A stretch of DNA of 64,000 nucleotides from Haliotis rubra (Eukaryota). The stretch is from the NCBI RefSeq assembly GCF_003918875.1, contig NW_025764891.1, forward strand, positions 9,052,001 to 9,116,000, written 5' to 3'. Made by a program: the position numbers and the translations under genes. How positions within the stretch are numbered: position 1 is the first letter of the stretch; the number at the start of each line of letters is the position of its first letter. The notes under the pieces were generated by a model. It was not told the DNA's origin. It did no database searches and worked only from the letters and a program-made list of their open reading frames with translations. Shown piece after piece: positions 622 to 60,597 of this stretch.

Positions 622-3600
622 CTGGTTCACTTTCAGCAGTCCACGTTTCATAGAAAATCCCAGTCTTGTTGTCCCACAGTGTCCACTGTGCAAATTCGTT
701 GAACATTTGACCTGGTACAGACAGAAAGAATACGTTTACTAACGGATTAATTCGCCCTGAAGATCAGGGTTTGAATGGGCCTTCAGAAACCCAAACTTGT
801 CGTAAGAGGCGACAGTTTGTTCTTTTGTTGATTAACGCTACAGTCGGCAATATTCCAGCTGTATGACAGCTGTCATAATAATCGAGTCTGGACCAGGCAA
901 TCCAGTGATCGATATCATGAGCATATCGGCACAACTGGGATACGATGCCATGTGTCAACACAGTCAGCAAGCTTGACCACCCGATCCCATTAGTCGCCTC
1001 TTACGACAAGCATGAGTTGCTGAAGACCAAGTCTAATTAGCACGGATCTTCACGGGCAACTAACGGATCAGGTGGTTAGGCTCTTTCATTTGAAAAGTGG
1101 GGCGGTGAGGTAGCCTATAGTGGTTAAAGCGTTCACTCGTCACGCCGAAGACCCGTGTTCAATTCCCCCAAATGGGTTTACATTTGTGAAGGCCCCCGCC
1201 GTGATATTGATTTAATAACGCTAAAAAGCGGCGTAAAGCCATACTCACTCACTCACTTATTGGAAAAGTCGAGGCATTTATTTGTAATAGTGGTAAGACA
1301 GGTTTTCCAAGTCTTCCATGCCCGATAAGAAACATATTGTACTCATTCTTCAAAACCTCTGATGTACCCGAGGAAGTACTGACATGCTCCTCATGTCAAC
1401 GCCGACAAAAATGTAAATCGGATGGACAAGCAGTGGACATATCTTGCGTATTATCATATTTCACCCTGCCTGTGATATAACGACTGCGGCGTTTAACAAC
1501 ATCCCTTCACTCACTCTCCATGCAGGGGCGGTGGGGTAGCCTAGTGGTTAAAGCGTGCGCTCGTCACGCCGAAGACCCGGGTTCGATTCCCTACATGGGT
1601 TAAATGTGTGAAGCCCATTTCTGGTGTCCCACGCCGTGATATTGCTGGGATATTGCTGAAAGCGGTGTAAAACCATACTCACTCACACTCCCCCTGCTTG
1701 CATACCGGTTATGTCGGCCACCTTGACCAAGGTGCCGTTTTGCGACCAGTGGATGTCGTCAATGCCGTCGTATATGCAGGTGGCGCCCTGGTTGCACCAT
1801 TCCAAGGTGTTGTTGGGCAGAACGTGGGCGAAGGTGCAGTTGAACAGCTGGAACAGCTCGTACCACTCCATGGTGTAGTTGAGGCCGGTGTTGAGGTTCT
1901 TGAACCCAAGGGCGTCGTGCATGATATGCTGAAGCAGATGTTAAGTCCATTGCTGCACTATTAGTAACACTCATAGACCTCACAAATCCTATATATGGGA
2001 TAGTACTAAGTGCAAACCTAATACTTTTTTATCGAATGAGTCCGTTCCTAGATTCAAACCCAACTCTCAGAGAGGTAGAGAACTGGAAGACCTAATCGCG
2101 TTGAGTCACAAAGCCTCTGAGAAGTGCAAAGACGCTAACTGTGCTAGTGATTAGGTGGCGCACTCTGAGAGTACGGGTTCCCAAGGGGGAATGATGTCTC
2201 AGTAGCATTATTATTGACAATTAACATATATAATTAGAACTTTAGAAAACTACCCTGATGTTATATTTGATTCAAATAATTATTTTGAAATATAGTACAT
2301 GTCTCTGTAACATTGTTATTGACAATTAACGTATACAAATAACATGATAGAAAACTGCACTGAAGTGATATTGATTCAAACCATCATTTTGCAAAATACT
2401 ATACAAAAGATTTATATAACATAGACAAAAACACACAAAACACGCTTACAACGTTTTGCCCAACCGGCACGTTTTCAAAATATCTTCAGGATGAATAGAC
2501 TAACGCTTAGTCACTGAATATATATCATTTTAATAGAAACAAATGGTTCCTTTTAAACTGAAAAGGAGCCCCAGTGAGATGGGAGACCCTAAGGAATTAT
2601 AGACTTGCTCCATTTAAGGCTTTAGCATTACAGAAAGAGCTGGGCGGACTAAGGGAGACAGGCTACAGAACGCAAAGTTGACTTAGTGCCCATTACATTA
2701 AAATGATGCATTGTACTTACAAACTTGGCAAGCAGGTCACCAAACTTGAACTCCCAGACTGGGGCCTTCAGAGCATACACCTCTATCACGTCAGTGGCCT
2801 GAAAGGTCGGCATGGTGTTGGCTTCTCGCCCTGTGGGACAGAATGGGATCACCCCAGCCTGGCAGTAAGGGTTTGTTGGGGGTCGGGACGTAAACCGCCT
2901 GAAAAACCATATATGTACCCTTAGAACACTGAGATCTTGTATCTTCTCTAAAAAGGAGTGAGTGAGTTTAGTTTTACGCCGCTTTAGCAATATTCCAGCA
3001 ACACAACGGCGGGGGACACAAGAAATGGGCTTCGGGTTTTCAACGCGATGAGCGGACGCTTAAACCATTAAGCTACCTCATTGTCTCTATCCAAATACGA
3101 GGAACGCATGCTATTACAAAGTTGTTAGATTGCACATATTTTCTTTCTGATGCATATATTGATGCTCATTCTGTTGATCACTGGATTGTCTGGTCCAGAC
3201 TCGAGTTTTACAGACCTCCGCCATAAAGCTGTCATATTGCTGTGTGCGGCGTTAAACAACAAACCAACGAGCCAACCACTCACTATTTGATGGTTGGTTG
3301 GTTTTGTTGTTTAACGCTGCTCTCAGCAATGTTCCCGCTATATGAAGGCGATCTGTAAATAATCGAGTCTGGACCAGACAATCCAGTGATCAACAGTATG
3401 AACGTCGATCTACGCAATTGGGATACGATGACATATGTTGACCAAGTCAGCGAGCCTGACAAGTATGAGTTACTGAAGATTAATTCTAGCCCGGATACAA
3501 AATTGTTAAGCGTCCAAAATCATTTACCAAAATCATTTGTTTCAGGGACAAAACTCACATTCATGAATTGGGGCGGTGAGGTATCCTAAAATGTTAAAGC

Positions 3601-3962
3601 GTTCGCTCGTCACACCGAAGACCCGGGTTCGATTCTCCACAAGGGTACAATGTGTGAAACCCTTTTTTGGTGTCCCCCGTCGTGATATTTACTGGAATAT
3701 TGCTACAAGGGGCGTAAAGCTATAGTTACTCACTCACTTCAGAGTGATGAGCCAACGCTTGGACCACTAATCTACCCCACCCGATATGACAAGATCGCTG
3801 AGGCGTACAACGTTTAATTCAAGATTTCATATTCACAGGTCTCTGTAAAACAAATCTGAAAATAGTAACAACGTCTTACCGATATGGGACTGGCCATTCT
3901 GTTGCTGATGTTATTCCAATGACAACGAGAAATATCAACACAAGCCTATCGACCGCAGCCAT
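622..3962 (-). CDS. CLN5: CLN5 orthologue (copy 1), exons 1-4; last exon lies beyond the left edge of the window
   Basis: GT-AG exons 3962-3880, 2898-2721, 1928-1706 and 711-622 join in frame: [41 protein letters not shown]...FCPTG...[50 protein letters not shown]...WCNQGATC...[24 protein letters not shown]. This closely matches human CLN5 motifs ([58 protein letters not shown]). Signal peptide present. Confidence 0.95.
1525..1690 (+). mobile_element. tRNA-derived SINE, family A (about 160 bp)
   Basis: GGGGCGGTGGGGTAGCCTAGTGGTTAAAGCG (A box)...GGTTCGATTCCC (B box)...GATATTGCTGG.ATATTGCT.AAAGCGG.GTAAAAC, then (ACTC)n tail. Other copies at about 1098-1257, 2957-3080, 3570-3737, 8495-8595, 16590-16705, 19243-19405, 22166-22472, 29161-29310, 31323-31425, 51476-51638 and 57786-57935. 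Confidence 0.9.
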
Positions 3963-4009
3963 TTTGAAGGTCTGGTGTAGATTTCGTGACCCTCATGATC
4001 AAATGACAA

Positions 4010-4055
4010 CACGTGCTTGTAAGCTTCCATGGGCTACTTTAGCGATAGACACGTG
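4010..4055. promoter_or_regulatory. Two CACGTG E-boxes upstream of CLN5 copy 1
   Basis: CACGTG at 4010-4015 and 4050-4055, about 50-90 bp upstream of the ATG at 3962. Confidence 0.4.
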
Positions 4056-4358
4056 AGATCGGATACAGGCCAGGGGTCAAAGGTTTTCGGATACAATAAA
4101 TAAACACACCCGCCGTCTACATAGATAAAGAGCGTTGTGATCACACTGTAATTAAGTTGCTAGGTATACCAGTTTTCTATTCAGGGTTTAAAAGCAACGG
4201 CAATGACAACGAGCAACGTTGTTTGAAGCGATACTGCGAGATAATGCGATATCATGCTATATTTATAACCTACCAACTATTCACATATATACGTTAAGGA
4301 GAGCCCTCCTATATATACTACCCATCAATAGTTTAGACTCTCTTTAAACACTCACTAT

Positions 4359-6879: not shown

Positions 6880-9800
6880 TTATGGGAAATAGAGAGCTAG
6901 TTGTATAATGCTAAAAAACGGTTTAACAAGAGGTGCAAACCAATATTCGGAGTTGATATGAATGTATAAACCTCCGTGAGTTTCGGCATAAGTCTGCGCA
7001 ATTAGCATATTTGTCGCCGAATTGAATCCACCAAATGTGTTGTTAAATAGGCGGTAGTAGTCAGTGATGTTCTTGGCCAACGATTCATCCCGCCCCGAGC
7101 CGAAGATTACCGAAGAGTTTCCGAGAAACGTCGGTTCTGGTCCTCGGCTGGCCATCATTGTGTAGTTTGCCTTGGCGCCCTTCACGAATGTCACTCCTAT
7201 ATCCGCCATTGCGTGGTAGGTTCTGTTTATGAAACTACCACAGTCGTTGGAACGAAACCAGAATGTTGAACCTTTAAATAGTACAATGATGTCTGACATT
7301 TTGTCCCAGAAATAACGTTATCTTATTATGAAATATAAACATCTAGAAAACAAAGCCAAATGGAGCCCCGAACAATCCCTAATCTAAGGAGGCAATCTAT
7401 ACTTGCCAAATCATGCTAGACTTGAGTATGACTCCTGTTTAATACATTCTCTAGTGTCTGGGAAACAAACTAGCCTCCAGCAGGATCAGTGATTCACTTG
7501 ATGTCTGGCATGATATGTATTAATTGCATAGATCGATGCTATTGTCAGAAATTGAAGGTCTGGTCCACTCCATAATTTACAGCAAACACACAGCTGGAAT
7601 ATCCGAACCCGGGTCTTCGGCGTGATGAGCGAACGCTTCAACCACTAGGCTAACCCACCGCCCCGGAATATTGCTGATTGAGGACATACCAAAGAAACTT
7701 TGTACGAGACTTGACATCACTTTAGTGTATTAACAGGAGTAATCACCGTGTATTAGATCTATACCCAAAGAACTTATTTAAGCACCACTGATATAGCGCA
7801 CGATTGAATGAGCCCAGATCTTAACCCTTTGGAACATATATGGGACATGACAACAAAGGGATCCTTCTGTACCGAACCTGGCCCAACTGGAAGCTGCTTT
7901 ACACGAGGAATGGCGTATACTGCCCTTTCGGAGGAACAGAAGGCGGGGTATGAGGAGGAGAGTCATATAGTCACATGGAGATTACACTCGGTATTGACCT
8001 TAAATCGTGTAAGACAAGCAAAATGAGCAACATTAAACATTCCAGGGTCATACTTGTACAGACATGATTTTGTATGAAAATCGGTGTTTTTCAAAACGAG
8101 CAATTATCAGACAGGGGGTGCTTAATTAAATTCTTTGTGTATATATTATGAATGAGCATACAAAGATTCTACCGAAAGCCACCCATGCCTGATTTTCGAG
8201 AAGATCCTTACCTGAAGTGTCAAGGATAGTGCTGCCTCCACAGTCAATGTTTGTATCATTTTCATGCTGTAACCAGCCAGCATACTTGTTAAACTGGTTC
8301 CCTGAAACGACCAATAACATTTGACAGTAATTTTCCAGGATAACGATCAGTGAAGATCCGGATTTGAGTTGTTTTCAGCAACCCATGCTTGTCGTTAGAA
8401 GCGACTAACGTGTGGTCAGGCTCGCTGACTTGGTTGGCACATGTCATCGTATTCCAATTGCGTATCTGTTCCTACCAGTCATGTTTGCTGTGACTGACTG
8501 ACTGAGTTTGGTTTTACGCCGGTTTTAGCAATATTCCAGCAATATCACGGCGGCGGACACCAGAAATGGGCTTCACTCATTGTACCCTTGTGGGCATGTT
8601 TGCTATGAGAGACATCTGTCACTTCTATCTGTTCTTACCTGTCCTGTTTGTTATGAGAGACATCTGTCACTTCTATCTAGCCCTACCTGTCCTGTTTGTT
8701 ATGAGAGACATCTGTCACTTCTATCTAGCCCTACCTGTCATGCTTGCTATGAGAGACATCTGTCACTGCTATCTGTTCCTACCTGTCATGTTTGCTATGA
8801 GAGACGTATGTCACTTCTATCTGTTCCTACCTGTCACGTTTACTATGAGAGACATATGTCACTTCTATCTATCCCTACCTGTCATGTTTGCCATGACAGA
8901 CATCTGTCACTTCTATCTGTTCCTACCTGTCTTGTTTCGCTATGAGAGACATCTGTCACTACTATCTGTTCCTACCTGTCATGTTTGCTATGAGAGACAT
9001 CTGTCACTTCTATCTGTTCCTACCTGTCATGTTTACTATGAGAGACATCTGTCACTACTATCTGTTCCTACCTGTCATGTTTGCTATGAGAGACATCTGT
9101 CCGTTGTTCTCGGGCAGGAACTTGTCGCTTATTGCATCAGTGACGCAGAAGCCGCCTTGATTGCACCAGAGAAGACTGTCGTCTTCGAGCACTCTCGCGA
9201 ATGAACATTGACTGATGAGGTACAAACCGTACCAGTCAACGGTGTAGTTGGTGTTGGTGTTGACGTTACGGAAACCTACGGCCACGTGCTTCGGAAACTG
9301 CCAAAGACAAAATATGCAATTTTTCATTTATTCAAGCGGAACAGTTTAACATATCTTCAGTTTTGCTTTTGATAACATGGATAGAACGCCCACCCACCAG
9401 CAATGTCGCAGTGGGGTTTAAAATGATTATTTAATATTATATTGGGGGCACTAAAATGGGTTTATGTATGGGGAATTGAACGCGGATCCCCTTTAGGGAT
9501 ACAGCCGAATCCGACACATTTACCAGTCCAAAGATGGGACACATTAAAAAACCCACACTATTTGTTAATCCTCAAAATGTATGTAGATCCTAAACACTTT
9601 CCTTGTCCCATACTTTTGAAGCGTCAAGGTCTAAGCATGCTCACTACCTAATCAAATATCAGCCGTTTCCCTAGTGTTTAATCTAACCCAAATTTAACAC
9701 TGGTATTCTTACATCAGGCAAATGTAGGCTTGGCGTCAGATCGGAATACATATGGAACAGTTCCACTCGGTCATTATCGGAGAACCTCGGCATACTGATA

Positions 9801-10385
9801 CCATTTGCACAGAATGGTGGGTTGGGCTTCTCACATCTCGGATCTAACGGTGGCCGGTGAGACACTCGCCTGCAACACAGAGTGAGTGAGTGAGTGAGTG
9901 AGTGAGTGAGTGAGTGAGTGAGTGGGTGCTCTTTCAACAGTAGGCCTATTTCATTCAGAGAAATCACGAATATAATCCTGATGTTGTGCAGACAAACATG
10001 GGGTCATATTAGGGAAATAGATGTAATTCGAATGAGTAAGTTTAGTTTTCCGCCGCTTTTTTCAATATTCCCGCAATATCACGGCGGCGATGTAATTCGA
10101 ACCTTCATTACTGAATCATTGTATATTAGGGACACTCCTGTCCAAAACATGTTTTACTTGTTAAGGAAACATTTCTATACCTAAATTTTACATTTTGGAT
10201 AGAAGGGCGCCGTCCTGGCCGATGACGATAAGCTGGATAATTGCTAAGTGTTTTCGTTACACCACAAATATACAACAGAACGGCTAAAATTTCACTTACC
10301 GATGCTCAACTGGCCACTTGCGTTGTTGGGAATATACTTGTGACAGACAGATGATTGTGAGGATACCAAATATCATTGAGGACAT
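6880..10385 (-). CDS. CLN5-like paralogue copy 2, complete, 5 exons, 316 aa
   Basis: Exons 10385-10300, 9869-9713, 9297-9072, 8301-8212 and 7271-6880 total 951 nt with no internal stop and the same intron phases (2,0,1,1) as copy 1. Signal peptide MSSMIFGILTIICLSQVYS; motifs KWPVEHR, KHVAVGF..NYTVDWY, WCNQGGFC, WFRSNDCGSF, EPTFLGN, INSEYWFAP. Confidence 0.92.
7790..8130 (+). mobile_element. Tc1/mariner transposase 3' remnant
   Basis: SPDLNPLEHIWD motif (third acidic residue of the Tc1 DD34E triad) at about 7811-7846; frameshifted afterwards. Confidence 0.75.
8595..9100. repeat. 48-bp minisatellite (about 10 copies) made from the copy 2 exon 3/intron 3 junction
   Basis: Unit ATGAGAGACATCTGTCACTTCTATCTGTTCCTACCTGTCATGTTTGCT; the last unit overlaps exon 3. 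Confidence 0.92.
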
Positions 10386-11102: not shown

Positions 11103-11110
11103 TAAACAAC

Positions 11111-17100: not shown

Positions 17101-19080
17101 GTTTGTTTGACTGGAGACTGACACGTGCCCCTCATGTCGGATTACGTGGTAATCACTAATTTAGTTATCTGGTCTCTTTTGTTAAGTAATTTACTTCCAG
17201 GGACCGTGAGAAGACGTTTAGTTAAGCGGTATTGTTTACTTATCCAAGTTTAGTTAACCAGACTCTAATAGTGATAATTAATGAAGAAATTTGCCGGGAC
17301 CAAAGAATAGTGTTTACTAATCAGGTCAGTTTAGTTAAGCGGTCTTTACTTCTGCGGTTTCCACTGTATCTCTATTTACAGTTACCACTCTGTAACTTCA
17401 GTTGAATTACAGTGTGTGTTTTCACATAGTATTAGAATGGCGATAATCTTCTGTTCTTATCCTTCTCTGTCAGCGTTGTCAGCATATTCACAGTCATGCT
17501 ATAAACACAAGCAGAATGTTGAGTCTCGACACAACAGTGCTTCACGATATATATGTGATGTAACATATCTTATATACTCTTACAAAAAAAGTAGGGGAAC
17601 TTCATTGTTAATTTACAATTGAAAAATTGGGAGATATTTCAGAGTCAGTCAATGTTGATATGATAATAATGAATGTTGTGAGAGTGCATCACCACCTGCA
17701 CTTCGTTACGACCATAGTTGTTTGTACAGTAATCGCTCTTGAAAGATGATTGGTTTATGATGTGAAATTTGCATGTGTACGATTTTCATTTTCAAACCAA
17801 ATAACCCGGCTAGAAACAAACACTTACAAGTGTGTGATGCAAGATGATTGTCAAGATTAATGGTCTACAGTGATTTTTCGACCTTCTTCATGTTCTTGTA
17901 AACCGCCAAAATCAAGAATGACACCCCATGCTCGTGTATGGGGCTACTGCGTTCATCCCATGAGTTGTGTTTAAGGGTGGTGCAAAAGAGAAATGGCGGT
18001 TTGTTCTTAAGATGTTTGTCTTTGAAAAGTTTGTTAATGCTTAAATTTCCTATCCAAATTGAAACTTCAGGTTCCACTACTTTTTTTTAAGAGTATATGT
18101 GGGATCACACTTTATCAGTAAAGTGCAGATTCTAGGGTTTTTGGGGGTTGTTCAATCGCATTCAACTACCTTCGATTTTTTGTAATTGATAAGTTTTATT
18201 ATCTGTGTCTTTATCAGACTGGATTGTCATGCCCGCGGTCACGTCATAAGGTGCAGATAACTCTAAATGACAAAACTGGAAAATGGCGTATTCATTCATT
18301 GCTTGAATGAACATGTAATCAAATGAAAACCATACATTTTGAGCACTCAATCCCTCACTCCCTTGATCCCCAGCTGCTGGACCTGCAGTGGAGAGTGGGT
18401 GTGGCCATTAGTTCCGATGACTGCAAGAGCCTCAACTCCCCCCACCATCACCCTCCTCCTCACCATCGCTGAGACAGGTGGCAGCATCACCAAACACTCC
18501 GTGGAGATGACGCTCACCCAGTTTAGGGTAGGTGCTGCCATCTTGGACAACAAATGAGTTTCTTTGAAATGCTGGGAATTAATTTTATTCATATAACATG
18601 TATAGGTGTTTGAAGCAAACATGTTTAAAACAGCTAGCTGTTGATCTCTGAATTTGACCCTCAGCATGTTTAACATAGATGTTGAAATGCACAAATGATA
18701 CACATCGCACATCACTGATCATGAAGGTGAAATATATTTTTGGCAAACTTGGCAAATTCAGCCATAATGCATTGCTGTGGTAGCCATGTTATCTGGCACC
18801 TCACACAATTGAGATTGTTTTCATGCATTATTCTTCTTAGATGTAGTTAGAATGTATGCTATATTTTGGAGTTTATTATTTATCTTGTTTTGTTATAATA
18901 TGACTTAATATTGAAAATAATTAAAAACAATTTTATGAACTATAAATCCTCAGAGCTATATCTTTCTGTGACAGTAAATATATGTCAGAAATGTGTACAA
19001 CTTTAGGCATTGTCTTCATTCTGTTTCAGAATTTTTCCCGGCAGTTAAAAGAAATGGCAGTGTTGATGGAGACAGTTTGA
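11111..19080 (+). CDS. COMMD6: COMM domain-containing protein 6, 8 exons, about 200 aa (apparent +1 frameshift in exon 7)
   Basis: GT-AG exons 11111-11141, 12154-12212, 14109-14174, 15893-15969, 16269-16380, 16737-16790, 18374-18527 and 19030-19080. C-terminus LLDLQWRVGVAISSDDCKSLNSP/TITLLLTIAETGGSITKHSVEMTLTQFR-NFSRQLKEMAVLMETV matches the COMMD6 COMM domain (DFQWKLGMAVSSDTCRSL...FEMTIPQFQNFYRQFKEIAAVIETV). Total 604 nt, i.e. one extra C in the run at 18438-18443. Confidence 0.88.
11437..11760. mobile_element. MITE with long TIRs, carrying a nested small hAT-like element (11596-11688)
   Basis: TAGTTTCAGATACGCATTCGTGTGGTCGGCGACAG... is inverted at the right end; inner CAGGGGCGGAT...ATCCGCCTATG is flanked by AATATAC. 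Confidence 0.7.
12954..13363. mobile_element. Non-autonomous hAT element inserted in a family B SINE
   Basis: TAGGG...CCCTA ends; 8-bp TSD AGATCAAT (12946-12953 and 13364-13371); the flanks rejoin into SINE sequence. Confidence 0.85.
16000..16215. repeat. Degenerate (GAT)n microsatellite in COMMD6 intron 4
   Basis: Visible GAT-rich tract. Confidence 0.75.
16901..17366. mobile_element. Non-autonomous Tc1/mariner (pogo/Tigger-like) element
   Basis: TIR CAGTGGAAACC...GGTTTCCACTG with TA on both sides. Confidence 0.82.
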
Positions 19081-28216: not shown

Positions 28217-28349
28217 NNNNNNNNNNNNNNNNNNNNNNNNNNNNNNNNNNNNNNNNNNNNNNNNNNNNNNNNNNNNNNNNNNNNNNNNNNNNNNNNNNNN
28301 NNNNNNNNNNNNNNNNNNNNNNNNNNNNNNNNNNNNNNNNNNNNNNNNN
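28217..28349. other. Assembly gap (N run) within an A/C-rich low-complexity tract in the copy 3 3' UTR
   Basis: Run of N; the paralogous A-rich tract at 52260-52500 is resolved. Confidence 0.99.
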
Positions 28350-31400: not shown

Positions 31401-32591
31401 CAAACTCAGTCAGTCAGTCAGTCAGTCCTTCACAGATGTTCTATAGATAGATGACGTTTAGGCGCTGGACACATCGGATCTGTTCTGTTTCTCTTGGTGA
31501 TGCATTTCTGTCTCCAATCGGAATTAATATGGTACCTATTCTCACCACTTTGTCGATAGATGGAACGCGTCTTCCACTTCCCCTCATGCTGTAGATCACT
31601 ATGGTGTCGTCGTCATCAAAAGTCACCATCGGCACTCCGTCGGAACAGAAGTGTTTGTCCTGTGGGTTTTTACAGCGAGGATCCACTGGTGGTCTACTTT
31701 TAAAGCGTCTGGAAATATTAAAAAAGTGAACATGGTTAAAAAGGTTTGTTTGCGTGTTATTTATTACCGCACTAAGCAATATACCAGTGTTGTGATGGAG
31801 TCCTGTAAATATATTCGTATATATCTTTGACGCGTCAAAGAAACAGTCGATCCTTTTCAGTGTGGACACCGTTAGTCCTCGTTCCAAGCCGATGTAGGAC
31901 GTGCAGAGTTACTCATTAACAATGATTCGAGAATCCGATAAATATGTTTTGACAGACCAGTCGACGCACCCCTGTTTAGATGCCACATTCCCATGAGCCC
32001 ATGTTCTTGCATAACAAAGCATGACCTACAAACGACTAAAGTGGTCCTCGGTAATTCGGTTAGAAGTAACTGAACTGTTGAAACGTTGACGTAACGTGTG
32101 TGTCGTATGTTGTATATGTTGTACATATTATGCATATTTATTTTGCATATGGGCCTATGTCCTTCATGAACTAAACTGATTGATTGATCAGGAGAATTTA
32201 CAGTGAATTGTACCGTTCGGAATAGCGAAATAGTAAATAGTTTCATCTTAAAGTTCTAAACAAGCGAAGAAGATAACACTCTACTATAACAATGGTTTGA
32301 AAAGAAAACTTTCTACTCCCGACACCGATTATACATCCCGGCACCGTGTCTTTAGCTTTGGCGGTACTCCCCTACTCCCTTGGAAATTAGCTCTCCAGGG
32401 AAATCCGAAATATACATTTTAGCCTTCCCGGGACAACGAAAAAATAAATTTTAGCCTTCCCGGCACGACACCTTTCAGAACAACGACTCATGTTTATCTC
32501 ACCTATGTGGCATAACATAGTCAAAACTCCCAGCCTCGACTGTCGTCCAAATGATTCCATGAGAAAACAGTATCAGAGCTGTCAGCAACAT
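28495..32591 (-). CDS. CLN5-like paralogue copy 3, complete, 5 exons, 304 aa
   Basis: Exons 32591-32503 (MLLTALILFSHGIIWTTVEAGSFDYVMPHR, signal peptide), 31708-31546, 30615-30393, 30194-30105 and 28844-28495 total 915 nt, open frame. Motifs HHAGIG..YTLDW, WCNQGASC, WDNSTGIY, WTESWDCGSF, PEYLGNHTEIFG, YYNEAYW. Confidence 0.9.
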
Positions 32592-43986: not shown

Positions 43987-44041
43987 TGTCGATGCCGGGC
44001 CACAGTAAATTTTGCAATATTGCTATTAAAACACAGAACCC

Positions 44042-45660: not shown

Positions 45661-45663
45661 TTG

Positions 45664-46660: not shown

Positions 46661-46807
46661 AAGATAAGACCAAGAGAAGATAGTGATATAGGTTGTCTGG
46701 ATGTCATACGGGAATAATCTCCACAACTTGTTAGCATTGATCAATCTCACTGAAATTGTTTCTTTCACTCCGATTAAGTAGTGATGACTTTATGATATTG
46801 TTATATA

Positions 46808-51380: not shown

Positions 51381-54300
51381 ATGACTGACATTGATGTGCA
51401 CGTGTGTTATGCTGTGTTGCATGTTCGTGTCTACAATTCTGTGCCAACCGTCCGACCCGTTCAGTAGCTTCACAGGGCGGTGAGGTAGCCTGGTAATTAA
51501 AGCGTTCGCTCGTCACGCCGAAGACTCGGGTTCGATTCCCCACATAGGTACAATGTGTGGAGCCCACTTCCGGGGTCCCCCGCCGTGATATTGCTGGAAT
51601 ATTGCTAAAAGCGGCGTGAAACCATACTCACTCACTCACCCAGTCGCTTCACAGGACAAGTACACCTGGGGACGGCAGTGGCACACCATATGAAGACACT
51701 AATTAGGAACAATACGTACAGATATCCAATCAAAGTATTTATTTGTGTATTTGGAACGAGAAAATCCAAACTTGTCAATTTATTGTCTGGGAAATGCCCT
51801 TGATATTAAAACATTTCAATACACAGACGAAGTGACGGCCATTTGATCCAATGCAAGAAGGAGGGTGGAGAGTCGGGCAAGTTCATGTTGGGATACATAA
51901 CTACTGTTCCCTGTTGATGATCCCCGATTTCATTTGGCAATGTAAATGGCAATGGCATAGGAAATCGCCCGGTTTATCCTCACGGTGATGTCTCGGGTTG
52001 TTTCTTTAAGTGGAATTAGAAACTGGTTTGACGAAGAAGAGCAAATTTTATGGATTGAAAATCAACAAGAACATACGTGAAGGATACATGCGTTTATACA
52101 ATTGAGTGTGATTACATTGGTTCTGGATGTTGCGCATCCCTCATTTGAAAACGGTGGCAGCATCTGTGCAGTTCTCAATCCATGAAACCTGTCATTCTCC
52201 CGCTTATTAGTTCAGGAACATCAATATATTTTGCAACAACTCCTCTCCCCCAAAGACAGCAAACAAACCCAAAATAAACAAACAAAACAAAAACAAACGT
52301 CCCTCCCACCACAACCCCTCCCCAAAATAACAAAACAAAATAAACAACAAAACAAAAAACAAAAGAAAACCCCAAAATAAACAAAAAAAACCAAACAAGC
52401 AAAAACAAACAAACAAGCAAAAAAAAAACCTCCAAAACGAACTAAAAAATAACCCACAAACTCCAAACATAACAAACCCAAACAAACCCACAAAAAAATC
52501 TGTTACTGCTGCCACATGAACCTCATCCCCTGTTAAATGGTCTACTCGTACCCTGGTAACGGAACTACCATTTGGGTAAGCGTGTCTGGAGCTCGGGTTG
52601 TTAACTTCGCATACCAGTAAGCTTCATTGTAATACATGTACAAATGGTCAATATCTTTGTTGCCCCATGTCTTGAAGAACGAGATCAGCCTCTGGGCCAA
52701 GACTGGGTCTCCGTCAACGCCGAATATCTCCGTGTGGTTGCCCAGGTATTCAGGCATATATGTGTAGGCGATGGCCAGGTCGTAGGTTGGTTGAAAGTCG
52801 GGATAGAATCTCACGCCGAGATCATAGAGTGCTTGAAATGCCCGCTGAACAAAGCTGCCACAGGTCCAGGTGTCCGTCCAGTAGGGACCATCTGGAATGA
52901 AATGAATATGAGTGTGATTTAAACCCTTTAAAACATATACTGAAGTTTTTCACAGTCAGTAAGAGGCGACGTTAAGGTCGGAAATCTTATAGTTGATAGA
53001 ACTGGGTGGTCGATTATCAAGGGAATATGTGACTTTAAACTGACCAACGACTTAGCGTAAGGTTGAGAAAAGGTCAGGAATATGTGACTCCAACCAACGA
53101 CTAGTGGAGAAAAGGTCAAGAAAAGCCACTGAAAGAAAAATCAGTGGAGTGTATTACTCAGTGCAGATAAGAAATACTTACACTTCTCAGAGAGGTATAC
53201 AAAGTACGTGATCGAAACATTTTGTGAAAGATCTGTGGCTGAGTGGGTTAGATCGCTGTGCTTGCGATTTGGTGCCTCACACTGAGAGTGTGAGTTCGAA
53301 TCCCGGATGGGTCTCAACCCCAAAAGTATTAATCCCAAATATAACGCATTTTGCATTTAAAGATGAACTTCATGAACCTGCATTATTGCTGTGTTCTACA
53401 ACAAACAAAGAGACGGCAATAGTACTAGAATATGTACTTTTCTGAGAAAGTGATATATTTGACCACTTTCTAAATGGCATTCTGTATTCATTCAACAACT
53501 ACATTATATGAAGATTTACGTCTTTGTCCTGAGTTGGAAAAAAACAAATAAAAGGGAGAAGGCAAGGATGTGTCTCTTAGTACCAAATAAACGAAGCCAC
53601 TGACAATTTTAAAAGTCATGAAAACATCCTCTCCATCAATACGCTGTTTGAGGGCATTCTTTTGTGTGTCAGTCATTTTTTCAATCTTGAATTTCTCTCA
53701 AACTCGTCCGTTATGAATGGGACTGGCTGCCATGCTGAGGATGGTTTAACAAACACACTAGCGTAACCAATCAGATTGACAAACATACATCAAGGGTGTA
53801 TAATTTAAGATTGCGACAACCATGGACATATATCCATGGCTTAGGGTAGGTTCACGGAAATGCCACCCCGGATGATAGAGAATGCTCCCCAACTCACCCC
53901 TGGAACGCATCAGATGTACCGAGCCGCCATAGATACCAGTATTGTTGTCCCACGTAACCCAGTCAGAGAAAGCATTGATGATTTTGCCTGAAAAGATGTT
54001 TCCCTTTAAGTATTTTTAATTGGATAAGATAAAAATAACAGGAAATAACTGAATGTATAATACTTCCGAATTACTGCCCATCGTTGACCGGATTTATATA
54101 TTATCTCTGTGGAACATTGCCATGGATTGGTGTATACAAATTTACCATAGTTTCTCGCAGTGCCGCATTAGCTATTTAGGTATTGGTGACAATGGTGAAT
54201 CTTGTGGACCTACCGGTTGTCTTCGCCACTGGATGACGTTCTGCTGGTAGACCCTGGAAGAAACTGTTGAAACTGTCACTGAAGCATGACGCGCCTTGGT

Positions 54301-55269
54301 TACACCAGAGGAACGAATCATCCTCCAGCACCGTAGGTCAGGAGCAGTTTAAGATACCGAACATAGCGTACCAGTCCAAGGTGTAGTTGAAGCCAGTGTT
54401 GAGGTTGTAAAGGCCAATGGCGGCGTGATGAGGCATCTGAAGTGAATTAGCGAGTGTGTGAGTTGGTTTGGTTTTTACACTCAGATGTCTGCTGTCCTAT
54501 ACCTGGGCATTGAGCAGAAAAAAAGACGGTCATTTTGATTTTTTTAAGATGCACCTGGGTGACCTAGGTAAACATCTGGATGACCTTATTATGTATACGT
54601 AGGTGTGTGGTTTCATACTCTGCGTGTGCTAAAGTCGACTAACAGTTGTTATCACCGATGAGTAACGACTGGATATGGAATTTCGTGGTTCTATCTGCAC
54701 TGGTTATTTATGGCCCTTATTTGTCCTTCCTATTGACCAGTCAGATTTCATCGATCATATTACTTGCATTTGCTTCCAACAGAAGTGTTTGAGTTGATTT
54801 GGTTTCATACTCAGAGATTTTTGTGTGCTTAGGATGGAGTCGATGAGTGACGCCTGGATAGTGTGTCACATATCCTCCCGAAACAAAATAACATACAAGT
54901 TTCCACCATTGCAGAACTAGGCTGTAAATCCGTGGCTTAATGGTAGCGCCACCAGTGGCATGTGGCTAGTTATATCATTTCTTTGTCCTTCCTATTGGCC
55001 AATCAGATTTTCCCTATCATATTACTTGCATTAACTACCAACATAATGGCTGCTCCCAGTCAAGAGGAAATGATAAAAAATAAGATATAATATTGTATTG
55101 AAACGGGCATTACCTCTTCAAGTGTCTCATTATTACTTCAGCATCTTTCCTCTAGTAAATACCTATTGACGCTCGTTTGACGTTACACGTATGTTGTATT
55201 TATTGCAATCAACCCAGATATATATATTTATTTCGGGTACTGAAAGGCCACAGGCCTGTAGCACAACAC

Positions 55270-56980
55270 ATTTATAAATCAATATTTACACGCACATTGT
55301 AATATACAAGTAGAAGAGAAAATAATCAACTGTAGGTTACATTGTGTTCTGAGATATATTCTGTCCTAAACAACATGGGTTAGTAAGCAAACATGGACAA
55401 GTTTTGAAGTATAGTATGGTTTTTGTTATTTAACAATGCTGAAAATTTATAAAGGTTTGGATGGGCACAATAATATTTCTTAATATACAACTTTCTCAGG
55501 GAATTATAAGCAGGGCAAATTAAAAGAAAATGATATTCATATTCTATTTGGTTAATAACACATAATTTGCAAGTTCTATTTTCATTTTTGACATTTTTAA
55601 ATCTTCCACTTTCGATAAATAAATCATGTGAAGAACATCTTAATCTGCTTAACGCTGTCCTATACTTTTTGACGTTTAGACATGAAAGATAAATTTCGGC
55701 GTCAAAAGTACATTTAAACATCTTATAATACAAACATTTACTGGAAAGTGATAACTTTTCAAACCATTCTTGCAAATAGATATCTTTTAATCTTCGTGTT
55801 AGTTCTCAAATAAACTTACCCTCAGAATCAACATACTATTCGTTCCATACAAAACCAAACCCTTTCGAGAATAGAAAATTTCTAACAGAAGAAACCCAAT
55901 TTGTGTGTCCATTTTTATCTTATACCTATAAGAAGGCATCTTCAGTAATTTTAACCAGTATTTTATAACTCTGATATTTGAAAACAAGTGCATCGGGTAT
56001 TTACCACATGTTCCATACACCATTGTATTCATCGTATTGGATTTAGCACCAAGAAATCTTTTACATGCTTTCAATTGAACTCTTTCCATATCATTGCAAT
56101 AATTCAAACCCCATATTTCGGCTCCATACAATATAATTGGCTTAAGTTTGGCATCAAATATTTTAAAGTATGAACTTATAATCTATGTCTCCAAGTACAT
56201 TTAAATGTTTAAAGATACCTATCATGACCGTTTGTGCCTGCAAACAAGCGTAATTAACATGTGCTGTCCAAGATAAACAATTACTGAAGAACATTCCCAA
56301 ATATTTGTACGAACTGGTGCATTCTAATTCTTTACCTTTATACAACTGTTTCTCGTTTTTTCATAAACGTTCCCCTTTTTTAAAAGCTACTACTTTAGTT
56401 TTATTTCTATTTACAGTTAATTTTTATTTGTCACAATAACTCTCAAGTTCTTGTATAAGTCTTTGTAAACCTGCAACAGTGCTTGAGAATAGCACGATAT
56501 CGTCTGCAAAAAAGCAGAAGAAAAATATGTACTAGGTCAGGGTGTAACTGTATTCCATACTCACAATTGCTTTCAATTTGGGTTGCTAATTCATTTATGA
56601 AAAAGGAGAATAAAATGGGCTAAGTATGCAGCCTTGTCTTACCCCGAGTTGTAGTTCAAAGGAATCTGAGAATTCATTGTTATTCTTAACACAAGCTTTA
56701 ACATTTTCATACATATTCTGAATAATTTTTTTCATTTTAGGACTTAGACCATGGGTATTAAAAATAGGCCATAGCTTTTGTCTGTCAACTGAATCAAATG
56801 CATTTTCGAAATCAACGAAGAGTGTATAGAGTTTACCACCTTTGGTGTTGAGGTATCTCTGTATAAATACTTTGTAATATAAACATATTGTCAGTAGTCG
56901 TATATCCATGTCTAAATCCTAACTTGGATTCATTTATTTTATTCAATGCCTCTCCCCAAGTTACTAATCTTCTAATCAGC
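55270..56980 (-). mobile_element. 5'-truncated degenerate LINE (RTE-X-like) in intron 2 of copy 5
   Basis: FVDFENAFDSVDR, GVRQGCILSP, FADDIV, YKYLG, YGAEIWG and the C-terminal RCSSHDLFIESGR...CKLC...EYHFLLICPAY; multiple frameshifts. The clade call is from motif recall. Confidence 0.85.
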
Positions 56981-57411
56981 CCAGATGTGCAGGACAGTTT
57001 ACGAACCGGATTGTCGAATTCGTTACATGTGTCAACCCAAACATGACTACCATTCCAGCTAAATTCAGGTACCTCCCGTTTCTCGAGAAGATGTGTGACA
57101 CACTATTAGTGCATATTTAATCATCTGACCCAAAGTATTCAGTCAATGCTCAAATATTCTTTTTCCCCGAAGAAGGAGCCAAACAGTTTTTCCTTGGACC
57201 CAGAACACATTATGTATATTTTATTGTCTTGCTGAAACATAGGGACAGAGAGAAATTTTCGACCACTTTAAGGAACACATAACCTCTGAAATTTCAAACA
57301 GCCGGCCCTTGGAACAAGATACATGTAGATGGTGCGGACAGACAAGGAACTGAGGTATATTTACGAGATGGTTAGTGTTCATGCATGGGTTGTAAATATG
57401 TTTCACATATA

Positions 57412-57657
57412 ACCCGTGAAGATCCGGGTTAGAATTGGTCTTCAGAAACCCATGCGTGTCGTAAGAGGCGACTAACAGGATCGGGTGGTCAGGCTCTCTG
57501 ACTTAGTTGACACATGTCATCGGTTCCCAATTGCGCGGATCGATGCTCATGCTGTTGATCACTGGATTGTCTGGTCCAGACTCGATTATTTACAGACCGC
57601 CGCCATATAGCTTGAATATTGCTGAGCGCGGCGTAAAACTAAAATCACTCACTCACT
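57412..57657 (+). mobile_element. Family B SINE-like element in intron 2 of copy 5
   Basis: Full length, TSD TTTCACATAT. Confidence 0.88.
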
Positions 57658-58382
57658 CTTTCACATATTCTCTTGATATAGGTATTTTTGTCGTTGACGT
57701 TTAGGCACAGGACATCTCAAACCATTTCTGTATTTCTGGGTTGTGCATGTCTGCCCCCAACACCATCTGCATGTGGGTTAATTAAGAGTGAGTGAATGAC
57801 TTTAGTTAACGCCCCTTTTAGCAATATTCCAGCAACATCGCGGCAGGGGACACCAGAAATGAGCTTCACACATTGTACCCATGTGGGGAATCGGACCTGG
57901 GCCTTCGGCTTTAACCACTAGCCTACCCCACCGCTCTGGGTTAGTTAAGAAAGAATGTAGTGTTCTCACCACAACGTCGATGCCTGGGATGTGGACTCCC
58001 TTGTACCTCGTGCTGTAGATCATTATAACGTCGTCGTCATCAAACGTTACCATCGGCACTCCGTAGTAGCAGAAGTGTTGGTCCAGTGGGATTTTACACC
58101 GAGGATCCACTGGTGGTCTACTTTCAGAGCGTCTAGAAAATTAATGGTAAAGGTTTACAGACCTCAGCATAGCTAAGAGGTTTGTTTGCCACATAAAGGT
58201 ACATAAAGCACGACACTGGCCCAGACCAACAGGAAGGGGTGCAGGATAAAAGTTTCTTGCAACGAGTTGTTCCAAAATATACAACTGAACAAAGATTAGA
58301 ACGCAGTAATTTGTTTCTTACCTATCCCAAAATCACCTCTTCGAATTTATACATACGTTGTCTGATCTCTCAATCGCAGCGG

Positions 58383-58627
58383 GACCCGTAAAGGTCCAGG
58401 CTAGAATTGGTCTTCAGTAACCCACTTGTCGTAAGAGGCGACTAACGGGATCGGGTGGTCAGGCCCGCTGACTTGGTTGACACATGTCATCGCATCCCAA
58501 TTGTGTAGATCGATGCTCATGTTGTTGATCACTGGATTGTCTGGTCCAGACGTGATTATTTACAGACCGCCGCCATATAGCTGGAATATTTTTGAGAGCG
58601 GCGTAAAACTAAACTCACTCACTCACT
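58383..58627 (+). mobile_element. Family B SINE-like element in intron 1 of copy 5
   Basis: Full length, TSD ATCGCAGC. Confidence 0.85.
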
Positions 58628-58701
58628 ATCGCAGCTGCGCAGTAATACTTAACACAGCGGTGACATCATCGGACTGCCTGCTCACTACGCATGTTAAGGG
58701 T

Positions 58702-59075
58702 GAGGTGAGGTGAGGTGAGGTGAGGTGAGGTGAAATTGGGTTTAACGTCGTACTTGAGAATATTTCGCTCATATGACGACGTGCATGCGTGTGTATGTGT
58801 ATGTGCGGCTGCTTGTACTAGCCCAGACTTAAGCTGGTTTAATAGTGCTAGACCACTGAGATACCATGCCGCAGTGAAGCATGAATACCCCACTCAGACA
58901 CATTATACTGACACCGAGCCGACCAGTCCTTGTTGTACCCATTAATGCCGAGCGCCAGACAGGCACCAACAAGTACCATATTTTAACGTCTTTTGGTGTG
59001 ACGCGGTCGGGGATCGAACCCGCGGCCGTCCGCTCTCCGGGCGGACGCTCTAATCACTACACCACGGAGGCGGTT
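58702..59075 (-). mobile_element. tRNA-derived SINE with a Meta/MESC-like central domain
   Basis: tRNA head (GGTGTAGTGATTAGAGCG...GGGTTCGATCCCC), core GACTGGTCGGCTCGGTGTCAGTATAATGTG, (CACCT)n tail, 13-bp TSD GCATGTTAAGGGT (58689-58701 and 59076-59088). The domain name is from recall. Confidence 0.8.
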
Positions 59076-59519
59076 GCATGTTAAGGGTAAGGTATATTTT
59101 AATTATGATCTGGAAAGCAGTCCGATATTACTTTATTATCACGAACCTGGAATTGGATCCCATAGATATGTTTGATGTCGATTATTCCAACGTGAATAAG
59201 CAACAGGTAAACCACGTTAATGTGGCCATGGTTAGTCCACACTTTCTGGTCGGTCTTCATACATAGAACATAGTATTACTTTATTGCTCATTAACAAACG
59301 ACACGAAAATTCGGAAACATTTACCGATAGTCCAGTGGACACATCCCAGTTATAGATGACATATTCCTCACATGAACACATGTTCGTGGATAACAAAACC
59401 TGACACACTAACAGCACCACAAGAAACAAGTAAGTACCGTTCATTCGTTCATTGGGACAATTTATAGTTAAGTGTGCCGTTTGGAATACGGATGTTTCAC
59501 TGTAAACTGTTTCAAACCA

Positions 59520-59825
59520 GACCCGTGAAGGTCCGGATTAGAATTTTGGCCTTCAGTAGTTTGTGAGTTAGTTAGTTTTACGCCGCGCTCAGCAATATTC
59601 AAGCTATATGGCGGCGGTCTGTAAATAATCGAGTCTGGACCAGACAATCCAGTGATCAACAGCATGAGCATCAATCTGCACAATTGGGAACCGATGACAT
59701 GTGTCAACCAAGGCAGCGAGCCTGACCACCCGATCCCGTTAGTCGCCTCTTACGACAAACATGGGTTACTGAAGGCACATTTTAACCCGGACCTTCACGG
59801 GTTTGGCCTTCACTCACTCACTCAT
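59520..59825. mobile_element. Nested family B insertion (mini plus-strand element containing a full minus-strand copy)
   Basis: Outer TSD TGTTTCAAACCA (59508-59519 and 59826-59837); inner TSD TTTGGCCTTCA (59545-59555 and 59802-59812). Confidence 0.75.
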
Positions 59826-60597
59826 TGTTTCAAACCAACGAATCATGGTTATCTCACCTATGAGGTATAACATAGTCAAAACTCTGAGCCTCGACTGTCG
59901 TCTGAAAGATTCCACAGAAAAACAGTGTCAGAACTGTCAGCAACAGCAACATACTGGGTCGATGCCGGGTGATGATGTTTCTAATGAAACAAACAACCCA
60001 TTTATAGGTGGTACAGATAAAAGGAAATGATATTAATTAAAATTATTTTCATTTGTTTCTTGTGTTGACCCGAGCACGTCACTGCATGGGTTTATAGAGT
60101 TGAGTGATGACGTGAGCCTCATTTAATAATGAAAGAGAAATAGTTTGCAGCCGACATTGTATGACTACCTGGAGAGTTGCTCGTGTTGACTCGGGCACAA
60201 CACTGCATGGGTTTAAACGAAGCTTGAGTGATAGTGTGCACATGAGCCTCACATATAATAACGACAGAGAAATATTTTGTTGTCGACATCATATGATGTC
60301 AAACGGGAATAATCACCAAACCTTTCCGTTCAATTGAGCAAATTGTTTCTTTCTCTGTGACACGCTAGTAAAATAAGCACTGTGAGCATTGATCAATCTC
60401 ACTGAAGTTGGTTCTTTCCCCCTGATTCAGTTGTGATGACTTTGTGATATTGTTATATATGTGATCAAACGTTACATCAGTAACAGAATGAATTGCAAAT
60501 ATTTTGTTGCATGGCGTCATTCTCTATGCATCAATAACAGAATGATTTGACGTTGACGTTATTCTGTTTGTTGTATGTGACTTACATTGTTGTGTCA

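What the first reader, a model, noticed from the sequence alone, without database searches (positions are those of the whole stretch)
622..59952. Five-gene tandem expansion of CLN5 (Batten disease / BMP synthase family): one conserved orthologue plus four divergent paralogues with signal peptides
Seen: five genes in the same orientation with identical intron phases and a 90-nt exon 4. Copy 1 is close to vertebrate CLN5; copy 2 and the copy 3/4/5 group are strongly diverged but keep the signal peptide, the four structural cysteines, WCNQG and the YN..YW tail. Known: CLN5 is single-copy in mammals and is a lysosomal NlpC/P60-fold Cys/His/Glu enzyme. Inference: a lineage-specific family of neofunctionalised lipid transacylases, acyl hydrolases or thioesterases, possibly digestive, immune or mucus-related. 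I know of no description of such a family.
Basis: partly seen in the sequence, partly recalled or inferred. Interest (0 to 1): 0.88.

Follow-up and report, generated by a model that had tools for sequence, protein, structure and literature searches.

The report
Abalone CLN5 gene cluster with divergent copies
This stretch of the blacklip abalone genome carries the normal CLN5 (Batten-disease lipid enzyme) gene next to four strongly diverged extra copies, one of them broken by a stop codon; the family is real, abalone-specific as far as the databases show, and kept by selection, but it is already auto-annotated as "CLN5-like" and its function is untested.

Summary
Five CLN5-family (Pfam PF15014) genes lie on the minus strand. 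All have GT-AG introns, identical phases (2/0/1/1) and a 90-nt exon 4.

- **Copy 1** is the canonical gene. Its 191 residues are identical to the start of Haliotis rubra P0171, but its last exon lies off the window.
- **Copy 2** gives an intact 316-aa model. No H. rubra protein matching it was found.
- **Copy 3** is identical to RefSeq P0019.
- **Copy 4** is intact; RefSeq annotates only its last 214 aa.
- **Copy 5** has an in-frame TGA (54340-54338).
- **The N gap** lies 145 nt 3' of copy 3's stop codon, outside any coding sequence.
- **The array is not contiguous.** A COMM-domain gene on the opposite strand separates copies 3 and 2.

The same layout exists in H. asinina. H. rufescens and H. 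cracherodii also carry canonical, copy-2-type and copy-3-5-type proteins. A further member lies about 0.9 Mb away.

All divergent copies form one long-branched clade that I found only in Haliotis. They keep the signal-peptide-like N-terminus, four disulfide cysteines, His166, Cys280 and the CLN5 fold (TM 0.78-0.90 to 6R99). They replace Tyr258 and the acyl-pocket residues, and copies 3-5 lose one C-terminal helix.

dN/dS is 0.23-0.34 between species, against 0.085 for the canonical gene.

They are most likely secreted or lysosomal Cys-His acyl enzymes with changed specificity; this is inferred, not shown.

The parts
622..3962 (-). Copy 1: canonical CLN5 orthologue. Exons 1-4 are 3962-3880, 2898-2721, 1928-1706 and 711-622. 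Exon 5 lies outside the window.
   Evidence: Model, all GT-AG. Its 191 aa are identical to the N-terminus of H. rubra P0171 (332 aa). Pfam CLN5 scores 480 bits for P0171. dN/dS versus H. asinina is 0.085.
6880..10385 (-). Copy 2: divergent paralogue, intact, 316 aa. Exons are 10385-10300, 9869-9713, 9297-9072, 8301-8212 and 7271-6880.
   Evidence: Model. It is 85% identical to H. asinina P0004, which has the same exon structure. No H. rubra protein of this type was returned. dN/dS is 0.23. The AF2 model of orthologue P0004 matches 6R99 at TM 0.81/0.90.
28495..32591 (-). Copy 3: divergent paralogue, intact, 304 aa. Exons are 32591-32503, 31708-31546, 30615-30393, 30194-30105 and 28844-28495.
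   Evidence: Identical to RefSeq H. rubra P0019. The positional orthologue in H. asinina is P0001. dN/dS is 0.34. The AF2 model has pLDDT 85 and TM 0.78/0.82 to 6R99.
38595..43986 (-). Copy 4: divergent paralogue, intact ORF of 304 aa. Exons are 43986-43898, 42483-42321, 40784-40562, 39517-39428 and 38944-38595. It has D279->T and C194->W.
   Evidence: Model. Its C-terminal 214 aa equal RefSeq P0022. Site table. The H. asinina positional orthologue is a pseudogene.
52542..59952 (-). Copy 5: divergent paralogue with a premature stop. Exons are 59952-59858, 58132-57970, 54436-54214, 53987-53898 and 52891-52542.
   Evidence: Model. Splice sites and frame are otherwise intact. Exon 5 is nearly identical to copy 3 (dS 0.04, against 0.38 in exon 3), which indicates gene conversion.
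54338..54340 (-). In-frame TGA in exon 3 of copy 5, where copies 3 and 4 have CGA (Arg).
   Evidence: It is a C-to-T change at a CpG. Whether it is a fixed pseudogene lesion, an allele or an assembly error cannot be told from one assembly.
28217..28349 (.). Assembly gap in the 3' flank of copy 3, not in coding sequence.
   Evidence: it lies 145 nt downstream of the stop codon. Both flanks are collinear with H. asinina.
18311..18554 (+). COMM-domain exon of an unrelated gene on the opposite strand that separates copies 3 and 2. By synteny the gene spans roughly 10.9-19.2 kb.
   Evidence: Pfam PF07258 in two frames. The syntenic gene in H. asinina L001/L004 was called with a COMM domain. A 1-nt difference in a C run explains the frame change.

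Best explanation
This is the CLN5 locus of the blacklip abalone (Haliotis rubra).

**Origin.** The canonical lysosomal CLN5 gene (copy 1) gave rise, by tandem duplication in the abalone or vetigastropod lineage, to a clade of fast-evolving paralogues. These form three subfamilies: copy 2, copies 3-5, and a dispersed member about 0.9 Mb away.

**Dynamics.** The copy 3-5 subfamily evolves by birth-and-death and gene conversion. Copy 3 is the stably conserved member. Copy 4 is intact here but dead in H. asinina. Copy 5 carries a nonsense codon here.

**Shown.** The intact paralogues are protein-coding genes under purifying selection. They encode CLN5-fold proteins with a hydrophobic N-terminal leader, both disulfide bridges and the Cys280-His166-acid (Asp or Glu at position 183) centre.

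**Inferred.** They still work as cysteine-dependent acyl-enzyme catalysts: the thiol attacks an ester or thioester, and the acyl group passes to water or to a lipid acceptor. They act on different substrates from canonical CLN5, because Tyr258, the three acyl-pocket residues (V150, I164, I308) and the strand that carries V150 are all replaced. Copies 3-5 have also lost one C-terminal helix. They probably act in the secretory or lysosomal lumen, or extracellularly.
For: - **Family and gene structure:**. Whole-protein Pfam CLN5 scores are 161-209 bits for the paralogues against a cut-off of 27.
- **Species:**
- **Conserved locus in H. asinina:** three copy-3-5-type genes, then a COMM-domain gene, then copy-2 type, then canonical, then AIF1. 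Paralogues also occur in H. rufescens and H. cracherodii.
- **One paralogue clade:** support 100/99, inside the mollusc part of the tree. Grouping it with the Haliotis canonical gene is not rejected (AU p = 0.20).
- **No non-Haliotis member** among 1.84 billion cluster representatives.
- **Selection:** dN/dS is 0.085 (canonical), 0.23 (copy 2) and 0.34 (copy 3). All bootstrap intervals are below 1. Core windows have dN/dS 0-0.19 with dS 0.3-1.0, so the conservation is not merely gene conversion.
- **Catalytic and structural residues:**, interpreted with PMC9012467.
- **Fold:** AF2 models at pLDDT 85-87.5 match 6R99 at TM 0.78-0.90, E 1.8e-24 and 3e-28.
- **Helix loss:** a helix at 271-286 of the copy-2-type model has no counterpart in the copy-3 model, matching a deletion of about 19 aa in the alignment.
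Against: - No expression or activity data could be reached. The only non-RefSeq sequence of the subfamily (L005) is genomic, not cDNA.
- Luebben et al. found that Y258D, V150S, I164S and I308S each severely reduce CLN5 thioesterase activity. The paralogues differ at all four positions, so they may be inactive.
- dN/dS is 3-4 times higher than for the canonical gene, and 0.48-0.59 among copies 3-5.
- Two of three members of that subfamily are damaged in one species or the other.
- The tree does not resolve where the long-branched clade attaches.
- Signal peptides were judged only by hydrophobicity.
Confidence: 0.6

Rival explanations
1. The paralogues are catalytically dead 'pseudoenzymes'. They keep the CLN5 fold and are kept by selection for binding (lipid, glycan or protein) rather than catalysis.
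For: Tyr258 is replaced by Cys or Gly, and all three acyl-pocket residues are replaced. D279, whose D279N variant severely reduces activity, is Thr in copies 4 and 5 (PMC9012467). The strand carrying V150 is rewritten, and it evolves at dN/dS of about 0.9.
Against: His166, Cys280 and an acidic residue at position 183 are invariant across all three subfamilies and four species, despite about 30% overall identity. The segment just after Cys280 shows dN = 0 against dS = 0.31. Retention of a complete nucleophile, base and acid set is hard to explain without catalysis.
Confidence: 0.2
2. The divergent copies are non-functional duplicates in slow decay. The gene models are artefacts of recent duplication.
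For: Copy 5 has a nonsense codon. The H. asinina orthologue of copy 4 has a stop plus frameshifts. dN/dS among copies 3-5 is 0.48-0.59. RefSeq models for copy 4 and for P0021 are partial. No H. rubra protein matching copy 2 was returned.
Against: Copies 2 and 3 have intact orthologues with identical exon structure in H. asinina, and related intact proteins in H. rufescens and H. cracherodii. Between-species dN/dS is 0.23 and 0.34, with no bootstrap replicate reaching 1. Core regions are under strong constraint. This rival is plausible for copies 4 and 5 only.
Confidence: 0.08
3. The divergent clade is an old, separate CLN5-like family that predates molluscs and was lost elsewhere. It is not an abalone-lineage expansion of the canonical gene.
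For: The stem is very long (1.07 substitutions per site) and identity to any canonical CLN5 is about 30%. The AU test does not formally reject placement outside all protostome canonical genes (p = 0.085) or outside canonical molluscs (p = 0.39).
Against: The best tree nests the clade among molluscs. The paralogues sit physically next to the canonical gene with identical intron positions and phases. No member was found outside Haliotis. Long branches are expected to be pulled toward the base of the tree.
Confidence: 0.1

Closest known systems
Canonical CLN5 (lysosomal bis(monoacylglycero)phosphate synthase / S-depalmitoylase; human structure 6R99)
   Same: Pfam PF15014 over most of the length. 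The fold is the same (TM 0.78-0.90). Both disulfides, His166, Cys280, an acidic residue at 183 and the N252 glycosylation sequon are kept, as is a cleavable-looking N-terminal leader. Intron positions match the neighbouring canonical abalone gene.
   Different: Only about 30-35% identity. Tyr258 becomes Cys (copy 2) or Gly (copies 3-5). The V150, I164 and I308 pocket residues are replaced, and the '[11 protein letters not shown]' strand is rewritten. Glu183 becomes Asp. Copies 3-5 lack about 19 aa, one helix of the C-terminal helical region. Evolution is 3-4 times faster, and the genes are multi-copy with pseudogenisation and gene conversion.
PPPDE1/PPPDE2 (DESI) permuted papain-like NlpC/P60 thioesterases
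   Same: According to PMC9012467 they share the circularly permuted His-Tyr-Cys centre and thioesterase activity with CLN5. They are the nearest structural relatives outside the family.
   Different: Not detected here by sequence or by Foldseek as hits to the abalone models. They are cytosolic, much smaller, and lack the disulfide-stapled N-terminal strand and the C-terminal domain.
Second CLN5-like gene of the whelk Babylonia areolata (P0134)
   Same: An independent extra CLN5 copy in another gastropod with a changed active site.
   Different: Only moderately diverged (63% to its canonical partner). It is on another chromosome-sized contig and keeps Tyr258, but has Ser at the Cys280 position. 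It does not group with the abalone paralogue clade.

Membership tests
CLN5 family (Pfam PF15014) | Significant match to the family profile above the curated cut-off | tested here: met
   Scores are canonical P0171 480 bits, copy-2 type P0004 209, distant member P0023 175, and copy 3 (P0019) 161, against a cut-off of 27. Individual exons of all five window copies also hit.
CLN5 family (Pfam PF15014) | CLN5 three-domain fold as in crystal structure 6R99 | tested here: met
   The AF2 model of copy 3 has TM 0.78/0.82 and E 1.8e-24. The model of the copy-2 orthologue has TM 0.81/0.90 and E 3e-28. 6R99 is the only significant PDB hit for either.
CLN5 family (Pfam PF15014) | Two disulfide bridges, C119-C208 and C126-C214 (PMC9012467) | tested here: met
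   All four cysteines are present in copies 1-5 and in every Haliotis relative that covers these positions. Bridge formation itself is not testable here.
Catalytically competent CLN5 (thioesterase / BMP synthase) | Nucleophile Cys280 and base His166, with His positioned by Glu183 | tested here: met
   Cys and His are invariant. Position 183 is Glu in copy 1 and the distant member, and Asp in copies 2-5.
Catalytically competent CLN5 (thioesterase / BMP synthase) | Third centre residue Tyr258 (Y258D is pathogenic and severely reduces activity) | tested here: not met
   It is Cys in the copy-2 type and Gly in copies 3-5 and the distant member. It is kept in copy 1. This depends on the alignment; a neighbouring Tyr (position 257) is kept in copies 3-5.
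Catalytically competent CLN5 (thioesterase / BMP synthase) | Hydrophobic acyl pocket V150, I164, I308 (Ser substitutions severely reduce activity) | tested here: not met
   All three are replaced in every paralogue: gap or Gly, Pro, and Met or Ala. They are intact in the canonical Haliotis protein.
Catalytically competent CLN5 (thioesterase / BMP synthase) | Measured lysophosphatidylglycerol-to-BMP transacylation or thioesterase activity | not testable with these tools
   Needs recombinant protein assays.
Lysosomal / secretory-pathway protein | N-terminal signal peptide and N-glycosylation sequons | tested here: inconclusive
   Hydrophobic N-termini have a maximum 9-aa Kyte-Doolittle score of 2.8-4.0, and there are 4-8 N-x-S/T sequons per copy. 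AF2 gives a low-confidence N-terminal helix for copy 3. No dedicated signal-peptide predictor was available.

The most novel reading that the evidence does not exclude
Copy 2 and copy 3 encode the first extracellular (secreted, for example digestive-gland or mucus) enzymes of the CLN5 fold. Their rebuilt acyl pocket would be adapted to lipids of the abalone's seaweed diet or of microbes, such as phosphatidylglycerol-type or other acyl lipids. That would make them a natural example of how the CLN5 Cys-His acyl-transfer machinery is retargeted to new substrates.
Probability: 0.15. Interest if true: 0.6.

Novelty: new variant of a known kind. Interest (0 to 1): 0.38.

Why it matters
CLN5 is a single-copy human disease gene, and its enzymatic role (BMP synthase, depalmitoylase) was established only recently.

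In abalone, the same fold has been duplicated and selection has preserved the Cys-His-acid centre, while the acyl pocket, the third active-site residue and a C-terminal helix were rebuilt. This gives a set of natural variants for asking which parts of CLN5 determine substrate choice and membrane or lipid engagement.

For abalone biology it flags candidate secreted lipid-acting enzymes.

The significance is limited. The proteins are clear CLN5-family members already carried in RefSeq as 'CLN5-like'. Tandem expansions of lysosomal or secreted hydrolases are common in molluscs, and no functional evidence exists yet.

Tried and rejected
1. **Full-length searches with spliced window proteins.** Not possible by reference, so I searched with copy 3's last exon and used the returned database proteins as proxies. 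Copy 3 equals P0019 exactly.
2. **Expression evidence.** The single non-RefSeq member of the copy 3-5 cluster (P0168/L005, run DRR299178) retains the intron acceptor upstream of exon 5. It is therefore genomic, not cDNA. No transcript evidence could be obtained.
3. **Literature.** Searches for CLN5 with abalone, Haliotis or mollusc terms, for CLN5 paralogues, and for the RefSeq product name found nothing relevant.
4. **Placing the paralogue clade by phylogeny.** AU tests left both 'sister of Haliotis canonical' (p = 0.20) and 'outside canonical molluscs' (p = 0.39) standing. 'Outside all protostome canonical genes' is disfavoured but not rejected (p = 0.085).
5. **A sixth copy inside the window.** Rejected. 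WCNQG occurs five times only. The extra member P0002 maps about 0.91 Mb away on the same scaffold.
6. **The N gap breaking a gene.** Rejected.
7. **Core identity among copies 3-5 being gene conversion only.** Rejected for residues about 192-256, where dN is about 0 while dS is 0.1-0.3. Accepted for exon 5 of copies 3 and 5, and for exons 1 and 4 of copies 3 and 4.
8. **Other hits of the whole-library search (P0003-P0018).** All are closest to canonical CLN5 of other taxa, not to the paralogue clade.

Full report
**Observation**

The window is eukaryotic DNA of about 40% GC with one 133-N gap. A six-frame motif scan found WCNQG five times, always on the minus strand. All-against-all comparison of stop-to-stop ORFs grouped them into four exon families, each present in up to five copies. 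Pfam CLN5 (PF15014) hits individual exons with E-values down to 1.8e-37.

I built explicit gene models by reading the splice sites and checked them.
- Every intron is GT-AG.
- Exon 1 ends in phase 2, exon 2 in phase 0, and exons 3 and 4 in phase 1, in all copies.
- Exon 4 is 90 nt in all five.
- Exon 3 is 223 nt, except in copy 2 (226 nt).

Three corrections are needed.
- Copy 1 lacks its last exon, which lies before base 1.
- Copy 5 has an in-frame TGA at 54340-54338, where copies 3 and 4 have CGA.
- A COMM-domain gene on the opposite strand lies between copies 3 and 2.

**The assembly gap**

The Ns (28217-28349) lie 145 nt downstream of copy 3's stop codon, in T/G-rich low-complexity flank. 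No reading frame crosses them. The two sides are collinear with the H. asinina chromosome. I did not fill or reconstruct the gap.

**Organism and annotation status**

Database proteins were retrieved with copy 3's last exon and with follow-up searches.
- Copy 3 is identical to a Haliotis rubra RefSeq protein (P0019).
- Copy 4's C-terminal 214 aa equal P0022.
- Copy 1's 191 aa equal the start of the 332-aa canonical H. rubra protein P0171.
- No H. rubra protein matching copy 2 or copy 5 was returned.
- RefSeq names all of these 'CLN5-like' or 'BMP synthase CLN5-like'.
- Relatives of copy 2 exist in H. asinina, H. rufescens and H. cracherodii.
- Relatives of copies 3-5 exist in the same three species, two annotated per species.
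- A further subfamily (P0002 in H. rubra, P0023 in H. asinina) lies about 0.91 Mb away on the same H. rubra scaffold.

**Locus conservation and dynamics**

In H. asinina the order is:
1. three copy-3-5-type genes
2. the COMM-domain gene (opposite strand)
3. the copy-2 type
4. the canonical gene
5. AIF1

This matches the window. By flanking and intron similarity the three copy-3-5-type genes are positional orthologues of copies 5, 4 and 3.

The H. asinina counterpart of copy 4 is a pseudogene, with a stop inside the WCNQG motif and several frameshifts. In H. rubra it is copy 5 that carries a stop.

Synonymous divergence is mosaic.
- Copies 3 and 5 have dS 0.04 in exon 5 but 0.38 in exon 3.
- Copies 3 and 4 have dS about 0.05 in exons 1 and 4 but about 0.3 elsewhere.

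This indicates gene conversion. The subfamily tree is accordingly unresolved for H. rubra and H. asinina, while the two American species share an older pair of duplicates. The overall pattern is birth-and-death with concerted evolution.

**Phylogeny**

I built a 46-taxon tree (LG+C20 PMSF) with canonical CLN5 from molluscs, other lophotrochozoans and deuterostomes.
- All divergent Haliotis proteins form one clade (100/99) on a long stem (1.07).
- That clade attaches within the unresolved mollusc part of the tree.
- Grouping it with the Haliotis canonical gene costs 1.8 lnL (AU p = 0.20).
- Putting it outside all protostome canonical genes costs 9.1 lnL (p = 0.085).
- Putting it outside canonical molluscs costs 2.6 lnL (p = 0.39).

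The tree alone therefore cannot date the origin. Three further facts favour an origin within the abalone or vetigastropod lineage:
- tandem linkage to the canonical gene;
- shared intron positions;
- no member outside Haliotis among 1.84 billion cluster representatives.

**Selection**

| Comparison | dN/dS (NG86) | Bootstrap 95% interval |
|---|---|---|
| Canonical, H. rubra vs H. asinina | 0.085 | 0.03-0.18 |
| Copy 2 vs orthologue | 0.23 | 0.15-0.35 |
| Copy 3 vs orthologue | 0.34 | 0.23-0.50 |
| Among copies 3-5 | 0.48-0.59 | not listed here (per-pair values) |

A sliding window over copies 3, 4, 5 and the H. asinina orthologue shows:
- strong constraint around WCNQG (0.12-0.19);
- strong constraint from just before the catalytic Cys to about residue 256 (0-0.18, including dN = 0 with dS = 0.31);
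- near-neutral values in the leader (1.4) and at residues about 61-95 (0.9), the segment that replaces the canonical [11 protein letters not shown] strand.

So the paralogues are constrained protein-coding genes with a conserved core and hypervariable patches.

**Active site and structure**

I used a 407-residue primate sequence for numbering, and Luebben et al. 2022 (PMC9012467) for residue roles.
- **Kept in every paralogue:** the four disulfide cysteines, His166 and Cys280.
- **Glu183** (which positions the His) is Asp in copies 2-5 and Glu in the distant member.
- **Tyr258** is Cys in the copy-2 type and Gly in the others.
- **Pocket residues V150, I164 and I308** are all replaced.
- **D279** is Thr in copies 4 and 5.
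- **Deletions:** copies 3-5 lack about 19 residues, and the distant member 17, in the C-terminal helical region.

| AF2 model | pLDDT | pTM | TM vs 6R99 | E-value |
|---|---|---|---|---|
| Copy 3 (P0019) | 85 | 0.83 | 0.78/0.82 | 1.8e-24 |
| Copy-2 orthologue (P0004) | 87.5 | 0.83 | 0.81/0.90 | 3e-28 |

For both models, 6R99 is the only significant solved structure. The copy-2-type model has a helix at 271-286 that is absent from the copy-3 model.

The literature places an amphipathic helix in the luminal C-terminal part of CLN5 (PMC9348797). That this is the deleted helix is my recollection of its coordinates, not something I tested.

**Interpretation**

Shown:
- a real, conserved, selection-maintained CLN5 family of several subfamilies in abalone;
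- the canonical gene alongside it;
- one nonsense-bearing member in this assembly.

Inferred:
- The intact paralogues are luminal or secreted Cys-His-acid acyl-enzyme catalysts with a rebuilt substrate pocket. I favour this because the complete nucleophile, base and acid set is invariant at about 30% overall identity and lies in the most constrained regions.
- The main rival is a non-catalytic binding role. All four positions whose mutation severely reduces human CLN5 activity are changed.
- General decay is excluded for copies 2 and 3, but is plausible for copies 4 and 5.

**Novelty**

No paper describing CLN5 expansions in molluscs was found. The sequences are nevertheless already in RefSeq with family-level names, and they pass every family membership test. 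I rate this a new, undescribed variant (subfamilies) of a known kind, of moderate interest.

CLN5 duplication is not unique to abalone. Babylonia areolata has a second copy with Ser at the Cys280 position.

**Earlier notes of this scan**

Two earlier notes on this same stretch agree with what I measured here: loss of about 18 aa of a C-terminal helix in copies 3-5, and hypervariable patches.

Noticed in passing
window 18380-18500 (+): The COMM-domain exon of the intervening gene reads in two frames. The window has one more base in a C run ('CTCCCCCCACC') than H. asinina ('CT-CACCCACC'). This is either a real frameshift or, more likely, a homopolymer error of the assembly. It warns that single-base lesions here, including copy 5's TGA, need read-level confirmation.
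   Followed up: partly
window 8595-9101: A 48-bp minisatellite (10.5 copies, 91% matches) begins inside the last ~30 nt of copy 2's exon 3. It repeats the exon end together with its GT donor through intron 3. The same array exists in H. asinina (L001 ~11764-12810). Each unit carries in-frame stops, so downstream donors would not extend the protein.
   Followed up: partly
L004 4690-7419 (H. asinina): An unannotated third copy-3-5-type gene lies between P0021 and P0001. It has a stop in the WCNQG motif and frameshifts in exons 3, 4 and 5. It is the positional orthologue of the intact window copy 4.
   Followed up: yes
L002 8502-13898 (H. rubra scaffold, ~0.91 Mb from the window): A further CLN5-like gene (P0002; H. 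asinina P0023) of a third divergent subfamily. An exon-2-like segment lies upstream of the annotated start, so the RefSeq model (219 aa) is N-terminally truncated.
   Followed up: partly
protein P0134 (Babylonia areolata): This whelk has a second CLN5-like gene on another chromosome-sized contig, 63% identical to its canonical copy. It has Ser at the catalytic Cys280 position and Ser at D279: an independent CLN5 duplication with an altered nucleophile.
   Followed up: partly
window 45971-47397 (-): Transposon remnants lie between copies 4 and 5: two reverse-transcriptase (RVT_1) ORF fragments and a helix-turn-helix (transposase-like) ORF.
   Followed up: partly
window 25095-27131, 33219-35901, 36657-37515, 49248-51374, 61381-62671: Large minisatellite arrays (periods 52, 56, 119/400, 26-80 and 40 bp) fill the intergenic spaces downstream and upstream of copies 3-5. 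Some are shared with H. asinina. Many short interspersed repeats occur throughout, for example around 19.6-20.8 kb, 57.4-58.6 kb and 63.5 kb.
   Followed up: no
L004 1047-1137 (H. asinina P0021 gene): The 272-aa RefSeq model P0021 skips the 90-nt exon 4, although that exon is present with intact AG and GT sites. This is probably an annotation or isoform matter rather than a lesion.
   Followed up: partly
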